From the NCBI GenBank assembly GCA_900088475.1, contig FLMG01000335.1, forward strand, positions 124,001 to 188,000: a DNA stretch of 64,000 bases. The letters are read 5' to 3'. Each line of letters starts with the position of its first letter. The first letter of the stretch is position 1. The stretch is from Hyphochytrium catenoides (taxonomy: Eukaryota > Protista > Hyphochytriomycota). Position numbers and translations under genes: made by a program. The notes beneath the pieces are model-generated. The model did no database searches. It saw only the letters and a list, made by a program, of their open reading frames with translations, and was not told the origin of the DNA. Below are positions 25,812 through 46,914 of the stretch, piece by piece.

Positions 25812-27476
25812 ATGGCATCTGTAACAAAGTCAGTGGCAGGGAAGACCAAGAACCTGGTCACCCGCTGTCCTTTCTTCAATGTGATTTCCAAGGAGAAGCA
25901 AGCGCTCCTCCCCAACCTGCCAGCTTTGGCGCAGCTCTGCCCGCACCTTCGCAGTCAGGGTTATGGTGGCTCTATGGTTCACATGTCTCATGGCTCTGCT
26001 GCGAGCCAGCAAGCGTCACCTTCTCTCTCGTCGATCCATGTCTCAATGGAAGAGGTAGCTGCACCTCAAGACTTGCACTTTCAGAGCGTCCGGTCTGCTC
26101 CCAACAGAGTGGAAGCTACCGTTTCTCCCCTAAAAAAGGCCAAAAAGGAACCAACCTCTTATGAGAAGGCTTTTAGAAAGACGATTGAGAATATTAAGAA
26201 CGAGGGCCGCTATCGTGTCTTTGCTGACCTGGAGCGTCAGCAGGGAAACTATCCCAACACTCTTTACCACCTTCCTGATGGCACTCAGGTAGAGGTGACT
26301 GGGTGGTGCAGCAATGACTACCTCTGCATGGGGCAGAACCCCAAGGTGCTGAAGGCGATGGAGAATGCGATCTACAAATATGGTGCAGGTGCAGGGGGCA
26401 CGAGGAACATCAGCGGCACTAACCATATGCACGTGATGCTGGAAAAGGAGTTGGCAGACCTACACGGCGCGGAGGGCGCCCTTCTTTTCACCTCGTGCTA
26501 TGTGGCCAATGAGACTACTCTGAGCACTCTGAGTAAGATCTTTCCAGGGATTATCATGTTCTCAGATGAGATGAATCACGCATCAATGATTCACGGTGTG
26601 CTAAACGCAAGAACCGCGAAGAAGATTTACAAGCACAATGACTTGGAGCATTTGGAGAAGCTTCTAAAAGAGGCAGACCCAGATGCTCCCAAGCTGATTC
26701 TTTTTGAGAGTGTGAACTCCATGGAGGGGACCATTGCGCCAATCGAAGAGATCTGCGACTTGGCTGACAAGTACAACGCAATGACCTTCTGCGATGAAGT
26801 GCACGCTGTTGGGCTCTATGGCTCCAGAGGAGGAGGAGTGGCCGAGAGAGATGGTGTCATGGATAGATTGACGATGATAACCGGCACTTTGGGCAAGGGC
26901 TTTGGCGTCATGGGAGGTTACATTGCAGGCTCTGCAGCCCTTGTTGATGCTTTCCGTTCTACTTGCCCTGGCTTTATTTTCACCACTTCGCTTCCTCCTA
27001 CCCTTGCGGCGGGAGCGGTTGCATCTATCCAACACCTGAAGGAAAGCTGTGCTGAGAGAGAGATTATGCATCTCAACTCGATGGAGGTGAAGAGAAGATT
27101 GGTTGAGGAAGGGTTCCCTCTTCTTCCTTCTGTGAGCCATATTGTTCCTCTGATGGTGAATGACCCTGTGAAAGTGAAGCTAGCCGCGCAGATGCTTCTG
27201 GAGAAGCACAGAATCTACGTTCAACCGATCAACTTCCCAACCGTCCCCCGTGGAGAGGAAAGGCTTCGTCTCACTCCTTCTCCTGCTCACACCAAGGAGC
27301 ACATTGACCAACTGGTCGAGGCGCTCAAGGACGTGTGGGCACAGTTGGGATTGAAGAGGGAGAGAGCTTGCCCTCTGAGCATCAAGGACTACGCGCCCAC
27401 TAGTCCTGAGAAGTACCTCCCAGAAGTTACCTTCCACAACGTGGTAACTGACCTCCCTATGGTGGAGTGTGCATAA
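25812..27476 (+). CDS. ALAS: 5-aminolevulinate synthase, mitochondrial (intronless CDS, 554 aa)
   Basis: [56 protein letters not shown]-lysine motif [24 protein letters not shown]. The N-terminal extension carries two CP motifs. Confidence 0.97.
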
Positions 27477-35614: not shown

Positions 35615-38600
35615 ATGGAGAGAGACACGGTACAGGGCCTCCGAAGCCATATTATTAAGAGACTTCGCCTGGAGCGTGCCAGTGGCCCGTCGTCCTCCTA
35701 CAGTCATGCTAATCTTGGCCCAGAAGAACAGCGTCAGCTGCTGTTGCGGGCCTACGAGCTCGCGAAAAGCACAAAAGCAGATGACTCTTCGATAGAGAGT
35801 GCTTCCCGCAAAAAGGCGGACGACATAAGCCAACACCACAAAGATAAAGCTAATCAATTGTTTGCTGCTGGACGACATGCTGAGGCTCTAAGGCATTATA
35901 CCCTTGGCCTAGCCTACGCAGGCGATTGCCATCTCTTGGCTGTTCTCTTCTCCAACAGGTGGTAAATCCTCCTCGCCCTTGATAGTCTGATGCGCCCATT
36001 AGATGATATATGCTTCGTCTGCCTTCCTCTCCCACCTTGCGCTCTTCTCACACTACTTCCGCCTCCACCCATGGTCCCTCTCTCTTTGCCTAGATCGCTT
36101 GTCTTGGTGAAGTTGGGCCAGCTTTCCCTGGCCCTAAAGGACGGCGTATCTGCCCTTCAATATGATCCATACTACGCTAAGGCTTGGAGTAGACAAGCGT
36201 TCATCGCATCCACGATGCTTACTCTTGAGGTTGAGAAGGGAAGGGCTGCTGACACACAAAAAGAGATTGAGCTTCGCCGCTGGGCAAAGGTTGGAAAGGA
36301 ACTGGGAGAGAACCTACTGGCTCATTCAGACAAGATAGACAGGCGACTTACAGAGTGTGTTGCATCAACGGCATCGTATAACCTCTCAATTAAGGATTTC
36401 TGGGAAAAGCCGGCTTCTTTGGAAGAACAGCTGCAAGGGGAAGACACCAAGCCCATTTTGGCAGTAAGTCATGGTGATGAGTCAGGGAGGGGCTTGATGT
36501 CGCTCGAGGTGATAGAACCCGGTCAGGTGTTACTTCGGGAGAAGCCCATTGCATGGGTCCCTCTCATCTCTTCTCTCTCCACCTCTGGGGACTGGTGTTT
36601 TTGCTGCTTTGAGCCCTGTCTCGCCCCGGTTTGGTGCGAGTACTGTCCACAATTCTCCTACTGCTCAACTGTTTGCCGAGAAAGAGACTGGGATACTTTC
36701 CACAGCTTTGAATGCCAACAGAAGCTCTTCCAGGGTACGTATTTTCACCACAGCCTCGCCCGTATATCGTCCGATTGTCCCAAGTCTCGGTCTCTATTTT
36801 CTGCACGCGTACCTCACTCTCGCCACTTGTTGATCCTGTGATTCACCTTCTTCCCTCTAGACAATGGACTAGACCCGACAGTCCGCCTAGCTTATAGGTG
36901 AGTCTGTGTATCTGATTATGATTCTTCTTGTTTCCTTATAAATTAAGGCTAGTGCCCTTCTCTTTATGGTGGTCTCTTCACTCTTAGCACGCTTCTCTCT
37001 CCGGCGTCGGTGTGTTGCTGTTACTCGTTTTCAAACTTTTGGTCCGGTCGACCTACCTAAAGAAGGGTCGCTTCTGGGCGTTCGCTTACCTAGTTTCCAT
37101 CGAAATAGACTTAGAGCACTTGAGCGACTGCAACGACAGAGTGAATTGACACATTTCGTTGACCCTCATGAGCTGACCTCTAAATGGGGCTATGGCACTG
37201 TTAAACTGAGAGAATGGGAAGCCCAAGACGCCGAAGACCTTGCACGAATTGCCAACGATCTCGCAGTACGTTCATATGTTGGCCGTCGTAATATAAATGG
37301 AAGTAAGTCACAGGTTGCCGGCAGGTGTGGTGGTACCGCGGACAGAGTTTTCCCCATCCTTACGCAAAGAAAGATGCCCAGTCATGGATCCGGTCAGCTC
37401 AGGTTAGTGCGCCCTTCTGCCTCTCCGGTTCAAAGCTTGCCTTAGAACTTAATCCCCGACCGCTTAGCTCCTGTTCCCTACGTCTGGGCAGTTAGGTGTA
37501 ACAAGAATAATCACACTTTCGCCTTTGAATTGCTACTTTACCTTCCCAGCTCTTGCTCATATGCCACCTCATTTTGTTTCTACTCTCTGCCTGCGGTCCT
37601 CCCATAACTAGTCCGCATCAATTAATGCGTCCCAACAAATCTCTGGAGAAGGGTGTCATCTGGCTTTGGAAATGTTGGACAAGGCAGGCCAAGCGGCTTC
37701 CCTCGCCGGAGCCGTGTCTCTCACTTTACCGCAATCCAAGTCTTCCTTCGCTCTTCTTGGCTTTTGGTTTAAATCATCACTAGATAGGGTGCAGCGGATT
37801 CACTGCCTCACGGCCGCATTGGAAAAAGTGAAGGAGCTGCTTGCCTGCCGCGGCAAGTGGAGGTAAGGGCCCCGTTGCCTGCTTTCGATGTCTTACGGTC
37901 CCATCTAAGTTCTAGGGTTTTTTTAATACACAGGAATATAGACATATATACTTGTGTTTCATCCTTCCCTCCCATACCAATAGGAATCTCGGATCAGCAG
38001 ACTCTTGAAGATTGTGGATTCGTTCTAGTCGGTAGTGATAGAACTACCTTACCACTTCCTTGCTCTTCTTCTCTGGATGTTAACGTTCCGTCAGCGTCGC
38101 CTCCCTGTCTCGTTTTCTCAGATCTGTCAAACTCACCTCACCTTTATATTTCAAGGCCGGGTCGCTGGTAAACGGTTGAAGCGTGGGCTTGCCTTGGACG
38201 AAGAGTGGTATCGATGCGCTCTAACGTTTACAAAGAATGCAAAAATGGGCCCATCCTTTGCCTCCCCATCTCCAAATCGACAGCTGGCTGATTTGGAGAC
38301 CCATTCCAGTGACCTGTCTAGAGAAATANNNNNNNNTTTCTGTCTCGGTCCCTTCATGTCTACCCACATCTATCACATTTTTGTGCCAAGGGATGCGCAT
38401 CCACCTTCTGCTGACGTTGTCATTTTGCCCAACCCGCATTGTATGTACGACTTCTAGGTCAAATGGGTCTCGCGGCCGACGGTACTAACGTTGAATCAAA
38501 TCGAATACGTGTGACAGGCTGGTCTTCTTACTGCTACAGACAAGTGGAGGCAAACCTTAGGAGGGTTTAGTGAGCAATCTTCCCTTGCAAAGGTACCAGA

Positions 38601-41856: not shown

Positions 41857-42783
41857 ATGGCCATCTGCGTGGAGTGTCGAGAGCAGGTGGACAAGACGTA
41901 CAAAGTGTACCCGGGAGGAAGCATCCAGCTCGTGAAATGCGTAAGTTCAGATCGACAGCTATATTCCTTAGGAGTTACGGCGCATCTCATAGCTCTCGCC
42001 TAGGAGAAATGCCGCAAAGTGACGGACAAGTATGTGGAGTATGAGTGGGTCCTCATCTTTCTCGACATTGTGCTGCACAAGGTCCAAGTGTATCGGCATC
42101 TATTGTTCAACAGAGGCATTACTGTTTCTCTGGTAAGTTACTTTCTGAAGCGCAGGAGGCTAAGCGCTAGAAGGACTCTCGTTGACCTCAATAACGCATT
42201 TAATCCGTCAGAGCTTTATCCTCAAGAGTTGGCTACTCCTTGTCTTGGCTGGGGCGTACAAGGATTACGCTGTCACGCGGTCTGAGAAGAAAGAACTGCT
42301 TATCGACGTTTTTCGAGACCCAGCTTTTCAGTCCCGTGTTCTCGTGTCCACAGTGGGCTCAATCGCTTTCATACTCGTCCTTGTTGCTTGCCATGAACGG
42401 CTGCTGCATCTCTCAGAGCTAGAGGCACTAGTTGGCAACCTGAAAGAGCGAGTGGGCCTTCTGACCGCTGGAATACTAATCAGTTCGTCTTTTCGTCTCC
42501 TGGCGCTCTTGGAAGTGATCTGGAGCTACCACTTCACGCAGCTGCACATCATAGACGTTCTCACTTTCTCCTCAAACCTGACGCTGATGAAGGTAAGTAT
42601 CTACCAAGCGACGTACGTGAAGCGCTTTCATACTGCCCACTAAACCATGCTCCTTTCCTATTGCAGTCGCTCGCAAGGGATAGGCTCTATCTATTCAGCT
42701 GTAGCATAGTGCTTGCCGCTCTAGTTAGGCTTATGGCAGAGTTTACCACTACGGCTTTGCTAGCTAGAAGTTGGATCCTATAG
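41857..42783 (+). CDS. ARV1: Arv1 family ER sterol/lipid homeostasis protein (4 exons)
   Basis: MAICVEC...IQLVKC|EKCRKVTDKYVEYEWVLIFLDIVLHKVQVYRHLLFN (Arv1 homology domain), followed by hydrophobic segments. Confidence 0.92.
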
Positions 42784-44682: not shown

Positions 44683-45460
44683 CCTCCTCAATATCGCAAA
44701 AGTTCTTTCTAATCCTTCTGATTCCAGCGTCCTGCTACTTCGAGGCTTTGCTCCTTGTCGCGGTTATTCCTTACGCTTCCTGCCTCTCACCGCAAGCACA
44801 CATTGAGGATGTTGAACGAGCTCGTAGGTAGGTAGCGGGCTAGGATGAGACTGCGGCTGTCCTCCCTGAACAACACAGGCAAAGAATTACAGATCAGTGA
44901 AGATGTGACAGTGTAGGCAAATGCGCAAATATTGGGACCTCAATCGTCACCATATCACTATTTCAAACTACGGCTCCTACCTTTGGCAATAGAGCCTAGA
45001 GTCAATATGCGCTGATGAAATATCGCGATGATGTTAGGTCTAACTTGTCATCAGTTCAGTAAGTAGAGAACGAACTTGCTCACTTTCTTCCTCCATCGTG
45101 ATCAGCGCGATCGGATGCTGACCTCACCAGACCAGACCTCGAGACAAGCTCAGACATAGAGCTCTAGCTCGGCAAGCTCCAGCCAGACGGAAGGTTTGAA
45201 GATAGAGAGCAAGAGGTCCCTAGACATGAGGAACTGCAGTCCTCCTTAGGTCTAAGGGTCGTTACCATACTGTTCTCTCTGCGACGGTCTATTGAGGGCA
45301 AACCAGTGGGAGGCAAGTGCTGAGAGGACAGCTCAAGGGAAAAGTCCTCTACATCTAAGGTCCAATATAGTCACTTGGGGAGAGCGAATGTGGCTGAGGC
45401 ACCATTAAGCTCAGATCTGGCATTATTCTTCCAGCACTGCTTAAAGCCAGATGACAGGCG

Positions 45461-46722
45461 ATGGATGATGAGGTGGCCAGAGTAGTCAAGAGAATTCTAA
45501 AGGAGAATCGTGAGTGTGCCTGCGATCTCCACAATCCTTAGGCGTCGACGCTTGTTGCTAACTGTCCTTGCCCTCTCCGACCTTCCTCTATCTAACTCTC
45601 TTCCAAACGCAGAACGCCTTGCTCAAATCCTCCCATCTACGGCAGTTGCTATTGGCGTCCCTCATGAAGACGCTCGATGGCGCCGTCGGAGTCGCCCCAT
45701 GGAAGAAGAGGAGGAAGAGGAGGAACTTCCATTGGCAAGGATCCCAGAGAGTCAGCCAGAGTTTGCATCCACGGGTCCAGAAATGCCAAGCAATCTTGGG
45801 AAGAGGAAGCGTGGGACAGTGGAGCGAATGGTCAACCTTAAGGAATATGACTGCCGCATCTGCCTCTCACCCATGACGCGGACGCAGGTGCGAATGCCTT
45901 GCCCTCCCCGGACCCCCAATGTTTGTTGGGAGCCTTCTGTCTATTTTTTAGTATGATCTTGCTAGTGCACTCTCAGGAACTAATGTCTCTCGGAGGGGAT
46001 CATCCTCCTCAATCCATCTGATGTCCTTCTGTGGCCTTTGTGAAGATCCTCTTTGGTCTCTGAACTGTCGACCCTCTATGTGCCTTGATCCGAAGTCATC
46101 CTGAGAATAATCATCCTCTCTGTATGTCAAGGTGTCCATTCTAGTCCCTTGCATGCACCGCTTCTGCTTCTCCTGTCTTCGAAAGTGGTTCAAGGGAAAT
46201 TCAACACACTGTCCGTTATGCAAGGTTTCGGGAGAGGTCATCCTGTACCATATCTTCTCTGAAAGGGACTATAAACTGAAGATTCTCACTAGCGCTCCCA
46301 GAACAACAGAGAGCCACTTAGAGTGGGATCCTGCTCCTGAAGACCCCATCAAGCCAGCTCCACTGGGGCACCATGATACCGGACATGGTGACTCTTCGGC
46401 TGGCGCTTCTTCTCCTTCCTCTACCACTCAGGCGATTAAGGTCTGGTTCTCTTTAGACGGCGACATTTGGACGACAGTTGAGCAGAGCAATATTACCAGG
46501 CACCGCCTTGGTCTTCCACCACTACGAGTCAGAGAAGGCGAAACGTGCCAGCACAGAATACTGACGAAGCATCTGCAAGTGCCATCGTTTGAACTCTATG
46601 TCAGGCCCGATGGGGAGACGTCACTGTCTATATCAGAAAGTAACCGGCTGAGGGCTGCGTTAGGGCTTCGACCCCTACAGAGGGGGGCATTGCGCAGCAT
46701 GAAAGGCTGCCTGGGGGTTTAA
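45461..46722 (+). CDS. C3HC4 RING-finger protein with two C-terminal HIND-like motifs (3 exons)
   Basis: CRICLSPMTRTQ|VSILVPCMHRFCFSCLRKW..HCPLCK; C-terminal TTVEQSNITRHRLGLPPL and LSISESNRLRAALGLRPL; putative NLS GKRKR. Confidence 0.8.
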
Positions 46723-46914
46723 CCAAGGGTATAACATTTCCCCAAGCTGAAGCTGGCCTTCAGCTAAAAGCACTTGTGACCGTTCTACCCTGTATTCTAG
46801 TAAAGCATCCTTCCTCTTGATGCCCAGGTGAAGACGCTAAAGATGACGAAGTGCATTCTCTAGAGAAATTTGAGTCGTATCGCTTTCGTTGCATGAAATT
46901 CTGGCCCACTTGAG

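What the first reader, a model, noticed from the sequence alone, without database searches (positions are those of the whole stretch)
45461..46722. RING E3 ligase with two HIND (Hub1/UBL5-binding) motifs
Seen: a C3HC4 RING followed by TTVEQSNITRHRLGLPPL (46471-46524) and LSISESNRLRAALGLRPL (46624-46677). Each is preceded by a similar short segment (VWFSLDGD / LYVRPDGE), indicating an internal repeat. Known: the HIND element (roughly LSIEETNxxRxxLGxxPx) binds the ubiquitin-like protein Hub1 non-covalently and is described in the spliceosomal proteins Snu66/SART1 and some Prp38s. Inference: a ubiquitin ligase recruited to the spliceosome through Hub1, or regulating Hub1, which would be an undescribed link between ubiquitination and Hub1-dependent splicing.
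Basis: partly seen in the sequence, partly recalled or inferred. Interest (0 to 1): 0.75.

Follow-up and report, generated by a model that had tools for sequence, protein, structure and literature searches.

The report
RING ligase carrying Hub1-binding motifs
This protist gene encodes a ubiquitin-ligase (RING) protein whose tail carries two copies of the short motif that spliceosome proteins use to hold the ubiquitin-like protein Hub1; about ten unnamed protist relatives share this design, and I found no paper describing it.

Summary
A three-exon gene (45461-46722, +) encodes a 304-aa protein. It has an N-terminal helix, a C3HC4 RING split by a 244-nt intron, a conserved post-RING segment and two C-terminal HIND modules.

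- **HIND match:** Pfam HIND (PF19252) scores 28.7 bits against a cut-off of 25. The second copy passes alone at 26.5 bits and keeps 7 of 8 Hub1-contact residues of human SART1, including the salt-bridge Arg. The first copy is degenerate (4 of 8, Arg kept).
- **Family:** An exhaustive search of 1.84 billion proteins found about ten clusters with the same layout (RING plus 1-3 HINDs). One is a Blastocystis hypothetical protein. A profile built without the window scores the spliced protein at 199 bits end to end, which confirms both splice junctions.
- **RING type:** It is TOPORS/ICP0-like (72 bits to the EHV-1 ICP0 RING), the type found in SUMO-targeted ligases.
- **Origin of the HIND unit:** The extended unit (hairpin plus helix) is shared with protist SART-1 proteins.

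Best reading: a Hub1-targeted ubiquitin ligase, analogous to SUMO-targeted ligases. Hub1 binding, ligase activity and expression are all untested, and no RNA run was listed. Papers found describe HIND only in Snu66/SART1 and Prp38.

The parts
45461..45509 (+). Exon 1 (49 nt): start codon and the first 16 residues of the conserved N-terminal helix
   Evidence: gene model. The family profile aligns from residue 1 with no gap across the junction. The donor is GTGAGT at 45510.
45510..45612 (+). Intron 1, 103 nt, GTGAGT...CTAAC...CAG
   Evidence: The junction KEN|QRLAQILP matches the family motif IL..N..L...VP.
45613..45887 (+). Exon 2: rest of the N-terminal helix, an acidic run, the basic patch KRKR (45801-45812), the conserved VERMVNLKEY segment, and the first Cys pair of the RING (from 45852)
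   Evidence: The basic patch was located.
45888..46131 (+). Intron 2, 244 nt, GTGCGA...AAG (uncommon AAG acceptor), splitting the RING
   Evidence: The junction TRTQ|VSILVPC aligns without gaps to SRTQASILIPC of P0002 and to the family profile. The alternative TAG acceptor at 46143-46144 shifts the frame into a stop and destroys the RING (read).
46132..46722 (+). Exon 3: second half of the RING (to 46221), the post-RING segment, a disordered linker, two HIND modules, and the stop codon
   Evidence: Codon usage of the spliced CDS correlates 0.65 with long ORFs of the window in frame, against 0.24 and 0.16 out of frame.
45852..46221 (+). C3HC4 RING finger (coding parts 45852-45887 and 46132-46221), TOPORS/ICP0 type. 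It keeps the usual E2-contact features: Ile in C-R-I-C, Trp in LRKW, Pro in C-P-L-C, and Lys after the last Cys
   Evidence: Pfam zf-C3HC4. The family profile hits the EHV-1 ICP0 RING 1chc at 72 bits, against 48.5 for the next hit, RNF4. Non-family hits of the window query are named Topors or ICP0. P, C, H and W are invariant in the family.
46234..46287 (+). Post-RING conserved segment EVILYHIFSERDYKLKIL (family consensus LYSIRS..DYK)
   Evidence: It aligns to the ICP0 segment after the RING in 1chc. It is predicted as two strands at pLDDT above 80.
46432..46524 (+). HIND module 1 (core 46471-46524). It is degenerate: Hub1-contact positions read T V S T R L L L against human L I T L R L L L, and the salt-bridge Arg is residue 231
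   Evidence: No Pfam hit alone. It scores 17.0 bits against the family C-terminal module. It is predicted as strand-strand-helix at pLDDT 66-76.
46579..46677 (+). HIND module 2 (core 46624-46677). It is canonical: contact positions read L I S L R L L L, and the salt-bridge Arg is residue 282
   Evidence: Pfam HIND 26.5 bits alone. The best PDB sequence matches are the HINDs of SART1 (5o9z_P 115-145) and yeast Snu66. It scores 25.2 bits against the family module. The helix is predicted at pLDDT about 76.

Best explanation
The gene encodes a probably nuclear RING ubiquitin ligase of the TOPORS/ICP0 type. Its recognition part is one canonical and one weakened HIND module, where those relatives carry SUMO-interaction motifs.

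[quoted passage not shown] This brings Hub1 next to the RING-bound E2~ubiquitin. Ubiquitin is then put on Hub1 itself or on whatever Hub1 holds with its other (His63) face, such as a Prp5-type helicase.

In effect it would be a Hub1-targeted ubiquitin ligase, built like a SUMO-targeted ligase. It would set the amount of free Hub1 or of Hub1-bound clients, and through that influence Hub1-dependent splicing.

Shown here: the gene model, the RING and its subtype, the HIND matches, conservation of the Hub1-contact residues, and the existence of a family with this layout. Inferred: Hub1 binding, ligase activity, the substrate, and nuclear location.
For: 1. HIND PF19252 scores above Pfam's cut-off (28.7 bits; copy 2 alone 26.5). 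The closest solved sequences are the SART1 and Snu66 HINDs.
2. The eight SART1 residues that contact Hub1 in crystal structure 4PYU (L118 I120 T123 L126 R127 L130 L132 L135; R127A abolishes binding; PMC4141198) are matched 7 of 8 in copy 2. The Arg and two of the Leu positions are invariant across all family members.
3. An exhaustive phmmer search found about ten clusters with the same order of parts: N-terminal helix, RING, LYSIR..DYK, then 1-3 C-terminal HINDs. One is Blastocystis KAK8802158.1. Six of ten aligned rows match Pfam HIND, best E 1.9e-9.
4. A profile built without the window scores the spliced protein at 199 bits end to end.
5. The RING subtype is that of ICP0/TOPORS. Papers found describe these as SUMO-targeted ubiquitin ligases (PMC11402782; PMC7303953). 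RNF4 is the second-best PDB hit.
6. E2-contact residues are kept.
7. The extended HIND unit (phi-P-R-A-x-V ... D-G-E-x-x-C-S-V-E-E-T-N-R-I-R) is the same as in SART-1 family proteins P0024, P0033, P0096 and P0147. This points to a module shared by descent, not a look-alike.
8. Both units are predicted as hairpin plus helix.
Against: No experiment or complex model links this protein to Hub1, and Hub1 of this genome could not be reached. No RNA run was listed, so expression and the 3' end are unverified.

Copy 1 is degenerate, with two Leu contacts replaced by Thr, and does not match Pfam on its own.

The family is very small and only one member could be placed taxonomically. Its range and age are therefore uncertain.

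Hub1 is not known to be ubiquitinated by a dedicated ligase anywhere. RING fingers do not always have ligase activity. The structure models are of low overall confidence (mean pLDDT 55.6 and 64.9).
Confidence: 0.55

Rival explanations
1. Spliceosome-resident ligase. The protein is brought into the tri-snRNP or B complex through Hub1 and ubiquitinates spliceosomal proteins there.
For: HIND is otherwise known only in the tri-snRNP proteins Snu66/SART1 and Prp38. A HIND moved to another tri-snRNP protein restores Hub1 function in yeast (PMC8431670). The module is shared with SART-1 proteins.
Against: Hub1 in the spliceosome is held by SART1 and then by MFAP1 through the same face that HIND uses, in a mutually exclusive way. 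It could bridge this protein only if anchored by its other face. The protein has no RS, RRM or other splicing-related domain.
Confidence: 0.15
2. Hub1 buffer or competitor. The HIND modules only sequester Hub1 away from SART1, and the RING serves self-turnover or dimerisation without acting on Hub1 or its clients.
For: The HIND evidence is the same as for the best explanation. Some members carry 2-3 HINDs (P0002, P0003, the window), which would raise binding capacity.
Against: The RING and its E2-contact residues are the most conserved part of the family. That is hard to explain if catalysis were irrelevant.
Confidence: 0.1
3. The HIND-like helices do not bind Hub1 in this family. They bind another partner or serve as an internal structural element, and the protein is an ordinary TOPORS-like ligase.
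For: HIND is short (about 20 residues). Copy 1 fails Pfam alone. Four of ten aligned rows did not match Pfam HIND at E of 0.01 or better, two of them being window fragments. The family has Cys/Val at contact positions where opisthokonts have Leu/Ile.
Against: The same Cys/Val variants occur in the bona fide SART-1 proteins P0024, P0033 and P0096, whose HINDs score 71-93 bits. The salt-bridge Arg and the L-G-L-x-P-L part are invariant.
Confidence: 0.12
4. Silent or decaying gene, or a wrong gene model.
For: No RNA run was listed. Intron 2 uses a rare AAG acceptor. The window's protein is not in the protein collections.
Against: The frame is intact over three exons. The match to a profile built from other organisms is full-length and gap-free, at 199 bits. 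Codon usage is in frame. The intron lengths of 103 and 244 nt fit the 208-nt mean reported for Hyphochytrium catenoides (PMC5795050).
Confidence: 0.08

Closest known systems
HIND elements of Snu66/SART1 (and of plant and Plasmodium Prp38)
   Same: The motif and its Hub1-contact residues are the same. It matches Pfam PF19252 above the cut-off. As in yeast Snu66 and protist SART-1 proteins, there are tandem copies. The extended hairpin-plus-helix unit is identical in type to that of SART-1 proteins P0024, P0033 and P0096.
   Different: The host protein differs. There is no SART-1 (PF03343) or Prp38 domain. The HINDs are C-terminal to a RING finger, not at the N-terminus of a tri-snRNP scaffold.
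TOPORS and herpesvirus ICP0 (RING ligases that read SUMO through SIMs)
   Same: The RING subtype is shared, including the conserved segment after the last Cys pair (72 bits to 1chc; hits named Topors and ICP0). The general layout also matches: a RING followed by a disordered region that carries short motifs binding a ubiquitin-like protein.
   Different: This protein is much shorter (304 aa against roughly 500-1000). It has no RS region. A simple pattern scan found no convincing SIM. The motifs are HIND, which binds a different ubiquitin-like protein that is not conjugated to targets.
RNF4-type SUMO-targeted ubiquitin ligases
   Same: The working principle proposed here is the same: RING plus tandem motifs for a ubiquitin-like protein. 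RNF4 is the second-best solved RING match.
   Different: SUMO is covalently attached to the substrates of RNF4. Hub1 binds its partners non-covalently, so the 'tag' here is a bound protein and not a modification.
Yeast Uls1 and Nfi1, reported as two-hybrid interactors of Hub1
   Same: This is a preliminary published hint that Hub1 meets ligases of the SUMO/ubiquitin system (PMC8790634).
   Different: Those interactions go through SIMs and are independent of Hub1 Asp22, so they are not HIND-mediated. No HIND is present in those proteins.

Membership tests
C3HC4 RING finger ubiquitin ligases | Eight zinc ligands in the C3HC4 pattern with RING spacing | tested here: met
   C-x2-C-x15-C-x-H-x2-C-x2-C-x11-C-x2-C in the spliced product. 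Pfam zf-C3HC4 32 bits and zf-RING_2 29.5 bits on the exon-3 half alone. The relative's RING is modelled at pLDDT 86-93 and matches solved RINGs.
C3HC4 RING finger ubiquitin ligases | E2-dependent ubiquitin transfer | not testable with these tools
   Only the usual E2-contact residues (Ile, Trp, Pro, Lys after the last Cys) can be seen. They are present and conserved in the family.
HIND motif (Pfam PF19252) | Score at or above Pfam's gathering cut-off of 25 bits | tested here: met
   28.7 bits for the whole exon-3 product and 26.5 bits for copy 2 alone. Copy 1 alone gives no hit.
HIND motif (Pfam PF19252) | Conserved Arg (human SART1 R127) and the hydrophobic contacts to Hub1 | tested here: met
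   Copy 2 matches 7 of 8 with the Arg present. Copy 1 matches 4 of 8 with the Arg present (against PMC4141198).
HIND motif (Pfam PF19252) | Binds Hub1/UBL5 non-covalently | not testable with these tools
   No Hub1 of this organism was reachable, and the structure tool folds single chains only.
TOPORS/ICP0-type RING proteins | RING plus the conserved segment directly after it, closer to ICP0/TOPORS than to other RINGs | tested here: met
   The family profile hits 1chc at 72 bits, E 8.7e-19, against 48.5 bits for the next hit. The window query's non-family hits are named Topors or ICP0.
TOPORS/ICP0-type RING proteins | Orthology to TOPORS over the whole length (RS region, SIMs, long C-terminal part) | tested here: not met
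   Similarity to Topors and ICP0 hits stops about 60 residues into exon 3. The protein is 304 aa, has no RS region, and shows no SIM with acidic flank.
SART-1 / Snu66 family (Pfam PF03343) | SART-1 domain | tested here: not met
   No PF03343 match in any piece of the protein at E up to 10. P0024, P0033 and P0096 match at 85-194 bits.
SUMO-targeted ubiquitin ligases | Several SUMO-interaction motifs (a hydrophobic core next to acidic residues) | tested here: not met
   The pattern scan finds only two hydrophobic cores, at residues 109 and 157. These lie inside the RING and the post-RING fold, not in the disordered tail. The resemblance is in working principle only.

The most novel reading that the evidence does not exclude
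Some protists, at least the lineages of this window's organism and of Blastocystis, have a dedicated Hub1-targeted ubiquitin ligase. Hub1 is a ubiquitin-like protein that is never conjugated, yet here it would be read by the ubiquitin system in the way SUMO is read by RNF4 and TOPORS. This would give cells a degradative handle on Hub1 dose or on Hub1-bound splicing factors, and so on splice-site fidelity.
Probability: 0.35. Interest if true: 0.8.

Novelty: new variant of a known kind. Interest (0 to 1): 0.6.

Why it matters
Hub1/UBL5 is the odd member of the ubiquitin family. It is not conjugated and has no known enzymes, and its only described docking motif, HIND, is known only in two spliceosomal proteins. 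A conserved protein that joins HIND to a TOPORS/ICP0-type RING would be the first enzyme of the ubiquitin system built to recognise Hub1.

Hub1 level is reported to tune splicing fidelity, so it is an open question how free Hub1 is kept in check; this protein makes that testable. It would extend the 'ubiquitin-like-protein-targeted ligase' principle beyond SUMO. It also shows that HIND is a mobile module, found here outside the spliceosome proteins and, in passing, in small multi-HIND proteins of diplonemids.

The limits are that the family is small, confined so far to little-studied protists, and nothing has been tested at the bench.

Tried and rejected
- **Word-index protein searches.** All three failed to find relatives. 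The 196-aa exon-3 product gave nothing. The family alignment was swamped by RING words and returned only P0002, P0019 and P0152. P0008 found only itself. The exhaustive search was needed.
- **RNA evidence.** No RNA run was listed for 45300-46900, so read laying could not be used.
- **Organism look-up.** Searching for the window's aminotransferase ORF in public gene calls found nothing.
- **Family member contig.** The contig of P0008 (L001) gave no taxonomic clue.
- **ESM Atlas feature searches.** They gave only generic RING clusters.
- **Foldseek of the relative's model.** It gave only RING domains, none at E of 0.001 or better.
- **Gene-model alternatives rejected.** The TAG acceptor at 46143-46144 shifts the frame into a stop and breaks the RING. 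A GT...AAG stretch of 52 nt between the two HINDs (46529-46580) is not a multiple of three and would remove copy 2 from the frame, whereas the family profile matches both copies in the open frame.
- **Minus-strand ORF.** The ORF at 45948-46241 inside intron 2 was not pursued, because homology supports the plus-strand model across that intron.
- **Recent tandem duplication of the HIND units.** There is no DNA-level repeat.

Full report
**1. The observation**

The window is eukaryotic, with short exons and GT-AG introns. Between 45461 and 46722 on the plus strand I read a three-exon gene: 45461-45509, 45613-45887 and 46132-46722. The introns are 103 nt (GTGAGT...CAG) and 244 nt (GTGCGA...AAG), and the product is 304 aa.

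The RING is C-x2-C-x15-C-x-H-x2-C-x2-C-x11-C-x2-C and is split by intron 2.

Pfam gives zf-C3HC4 at 32 bits on the exon-3 half alone. HIND (PF19252) scores 28.7 bits against a cut-off of 25, with two matched stretches. Scanned separately, the second copy passes alone (26.5 bits) and the first gives no hit.

Against solved structures, the C-terminal 97 aa finds the HIND of human SART1 (5o9z_P 115-145) and both HINDs of yeast Snu66, including the 21-residue peptide of 3plv. The two units align with each other at 31% over 32 residues, including the segment in front of the helix. There is no repeat at the DNA level, so the duplication is old.

**2. The gene model**

I could not obtain RNA evidence, because no run was listed. 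The model rests on homology and composition.

- A profile built from ten relatives, without the window, scores the spliced protein at 199 bits from residue 1 to the last HIND. It runs gap-free across both junctions (KEN|QRLAQILP and TRTQ|VSILVPC).
- Codon usage correlates 0.65 with long ORFs of the window in frame, against 0.24 and 0.16 out of frame.
I did not verify that. The published mean intron length of 208 nt for that species fits (PMC5795050).
- The only oddity is the AAG acceptor of intron 2. The nearby TAG acceptor would break the RING.

**3. Relatives**

The word-index search was blank. The claim of novelty rests on absence of relatives, so I used the exhaustive search of 1.84 billion representatives. 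It found 191 hits at E of 0.001 or better.

Most are RING-only matches. A small set shares the whole layout: P0002, P0003, P0004, P0005, P0008, P0010, P0011, P0019/P0152 and the short P0038. Their alignment shows four conserved parts:

- an N-terminal helix (IL..N..L...VP);
- a basic stretch and VER...L.EY in front of the RING;
- the RING, followed by LYSIRS..DYK;
- after a disordered linker, one to three HINDs at the very C-terminus.

The RING ligands, a Pro, a Trp, and the Arg and two Leu of the HIND are invariant. Six of ten aligned rows match Pfam HIND, with best E 1.9e-9.

Only one member has a name: a hypothetical protein of Blastocystis sp. (KAK8802158.1). The others come from unnamed environmental or run assemblies. 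If the window is from a hyphochytrid, the family spans two distant branches of the stramenopiles. I cannot say more about its range.

**4. What kind of RING**

The family profile hits the RING of equine herpesvirus ICP0 (1chc) at 72 bits, E 8.7e-19, far ahead of the next hit, RNF4, at 48.5 bits. The alignment runs on into the segment after the last Cys pair.

The non-family hits of the window query carry names such as E3 ubiquitin-protein ligase Topors (fishes, a bird) and ICP0 (felid herpesvirus, Taenia). So the RING belongs to the TOPORS/ICP0 type.

It is not a TOPORS orthologue. Similarity stops shortly after the RING, the protein is a third of the length, and I found no RS region or SIM.

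**5. What kind of HIND**

The crystal structure of human Hub1 with the SART1 HIND names eight contact residues and a salt bridge between R127 and Hub1 D22. R127A abolishes binding (PMC4141198).

At those eight positions, copy 2 of the window reads L I S L R L L L (7 of 8, with Thr to Ser). Copy 1 reads T V S T R L L L. Family members read mostly C V T I/L/V R L L L.

The Cys/Val variants are not a sign of divergence from HIND. The same residues occur in the proteins P0024, P0033, P0096 and P0147, which carry a SART-1 domain plus two or three HINDs scoring 68-93 bits.

These SART-1 proteins also share the segment in front of the helix (phi-P-R-A-x-V ... D-G-E) with the RING family. AlphaFold models of P0002 and of the window's exon-3 product fold each unit as a short hairpin followed by a helix, at pLDDT about 66-79.

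The HIND of this family is therefore the same roughly 35-residue module that some protist SART-1 proteins carry. It is most simply explained by module shuffling between the two genes.

**6. How it most likely works**

Known facts, all from PMC8431670 and PMC8790634:

- HIND binds the Asp22 face of Hub1 with high affinity.
- SART1 and later MFAP1 use the same face, in a mutually exclusive way.
- Prp5 uses the opposite face, around His63.

TOPORS and ICP0 are described as SUMO-targeted ubiquitin ligases, that is, a RING plus motifs for a ubiquitin-like protein (PMC11402782, PMC7303953).

Putting these together, I propose that this protein is a Hub1-targeted ubiquitin ligase. Its HINDs capture Hub1 that is not held by SART1. 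The RING then ubiquitinates Hub1 itself or the partner on Hub1's other face.

The steps from motif to binding, and from RING to activity, are inferred. The basic patch KRKR in front of the RING suggests a nuclear location, and that is also inference.

A pure Hub1 buffer, a non-Hub1 partner and a silent gene are the remaining rivals.

**7. Comparison with the known**

In the papers I could search, HIND is described only in Snu66/SART1 and Prp38. No paper links TOPORS with UBL5 beyond list mentions.

The nearest published hint is a two-hybrid report that yeast Hub1 meets the SUMO-targeted ligase Uls1. That contact is through SIMs and is independent of Asp22.

The precomputed Pfam list for P0002 already carries both RING and HIND. 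The architecture therefore exists silently in databases, but I found no description of it.

I class this as a new variant of a known kind: known domains and a known working principle, with a new ubiquitin-like protein as the thing being read.

**8. Verdict**

- Interest is moderate to high for people who work on ubiquitin-like proteins and splicing. It is tempered by the lack of expression data, the weakness of copy 1, and the small and poorly placed family.

Noticed in passing
P0029 and P0055 (hits; not in the window): These are proteins of about 250 aa with four HIND motifs (Pfam HIND 116-118 bits) and no SART-1 domain. One is from the diplonemid Rhynchopus euleeides. HIND therefore occurs in at least one more undescribed protein type.
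   Followed up: partly
P0024, P0033, P0096, P0147 (SART-1 proteins) and window 46432-46470, 46579-46623: In these protist proteins the HIND helix is preceded by a conserved segment (phi-P-R-A-x-V ... D-G-E-x-x-C-S). It is predicted as a beta hairpin and lies outside the 25-residue Pfam model. It might add a contact to Hub1.
   Followed up: partly
window 45451-45468: A five-codon upstream reading frame (ATG at 45451, stop TGA at 45466-45468) overlaps the start codon at 45461 in another frame. It could damp translation (read).
   Followed up: no
window 45888-46131: Intron 2 ends in AAG, not the usual CAG or TAG. A 97-aa ORF lies on the opposite strand over it (45948-46241); it was not examined further.
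   Followed up: no
window 42019-42643 (+): An Arv1-family gene in at least two exons lies upstream (Pfam Arv1 50.8 and 32.2 bits).
   Followed up: partly
window 25812-27476 (+) and 35990-36841 (+): The first is a long ORF with a class I/II aminotransferase domain (245 bits). The second is an ORF with a borderline MYND finger (22.6 bits against a cut-off of 22.7).
   Followed up: no
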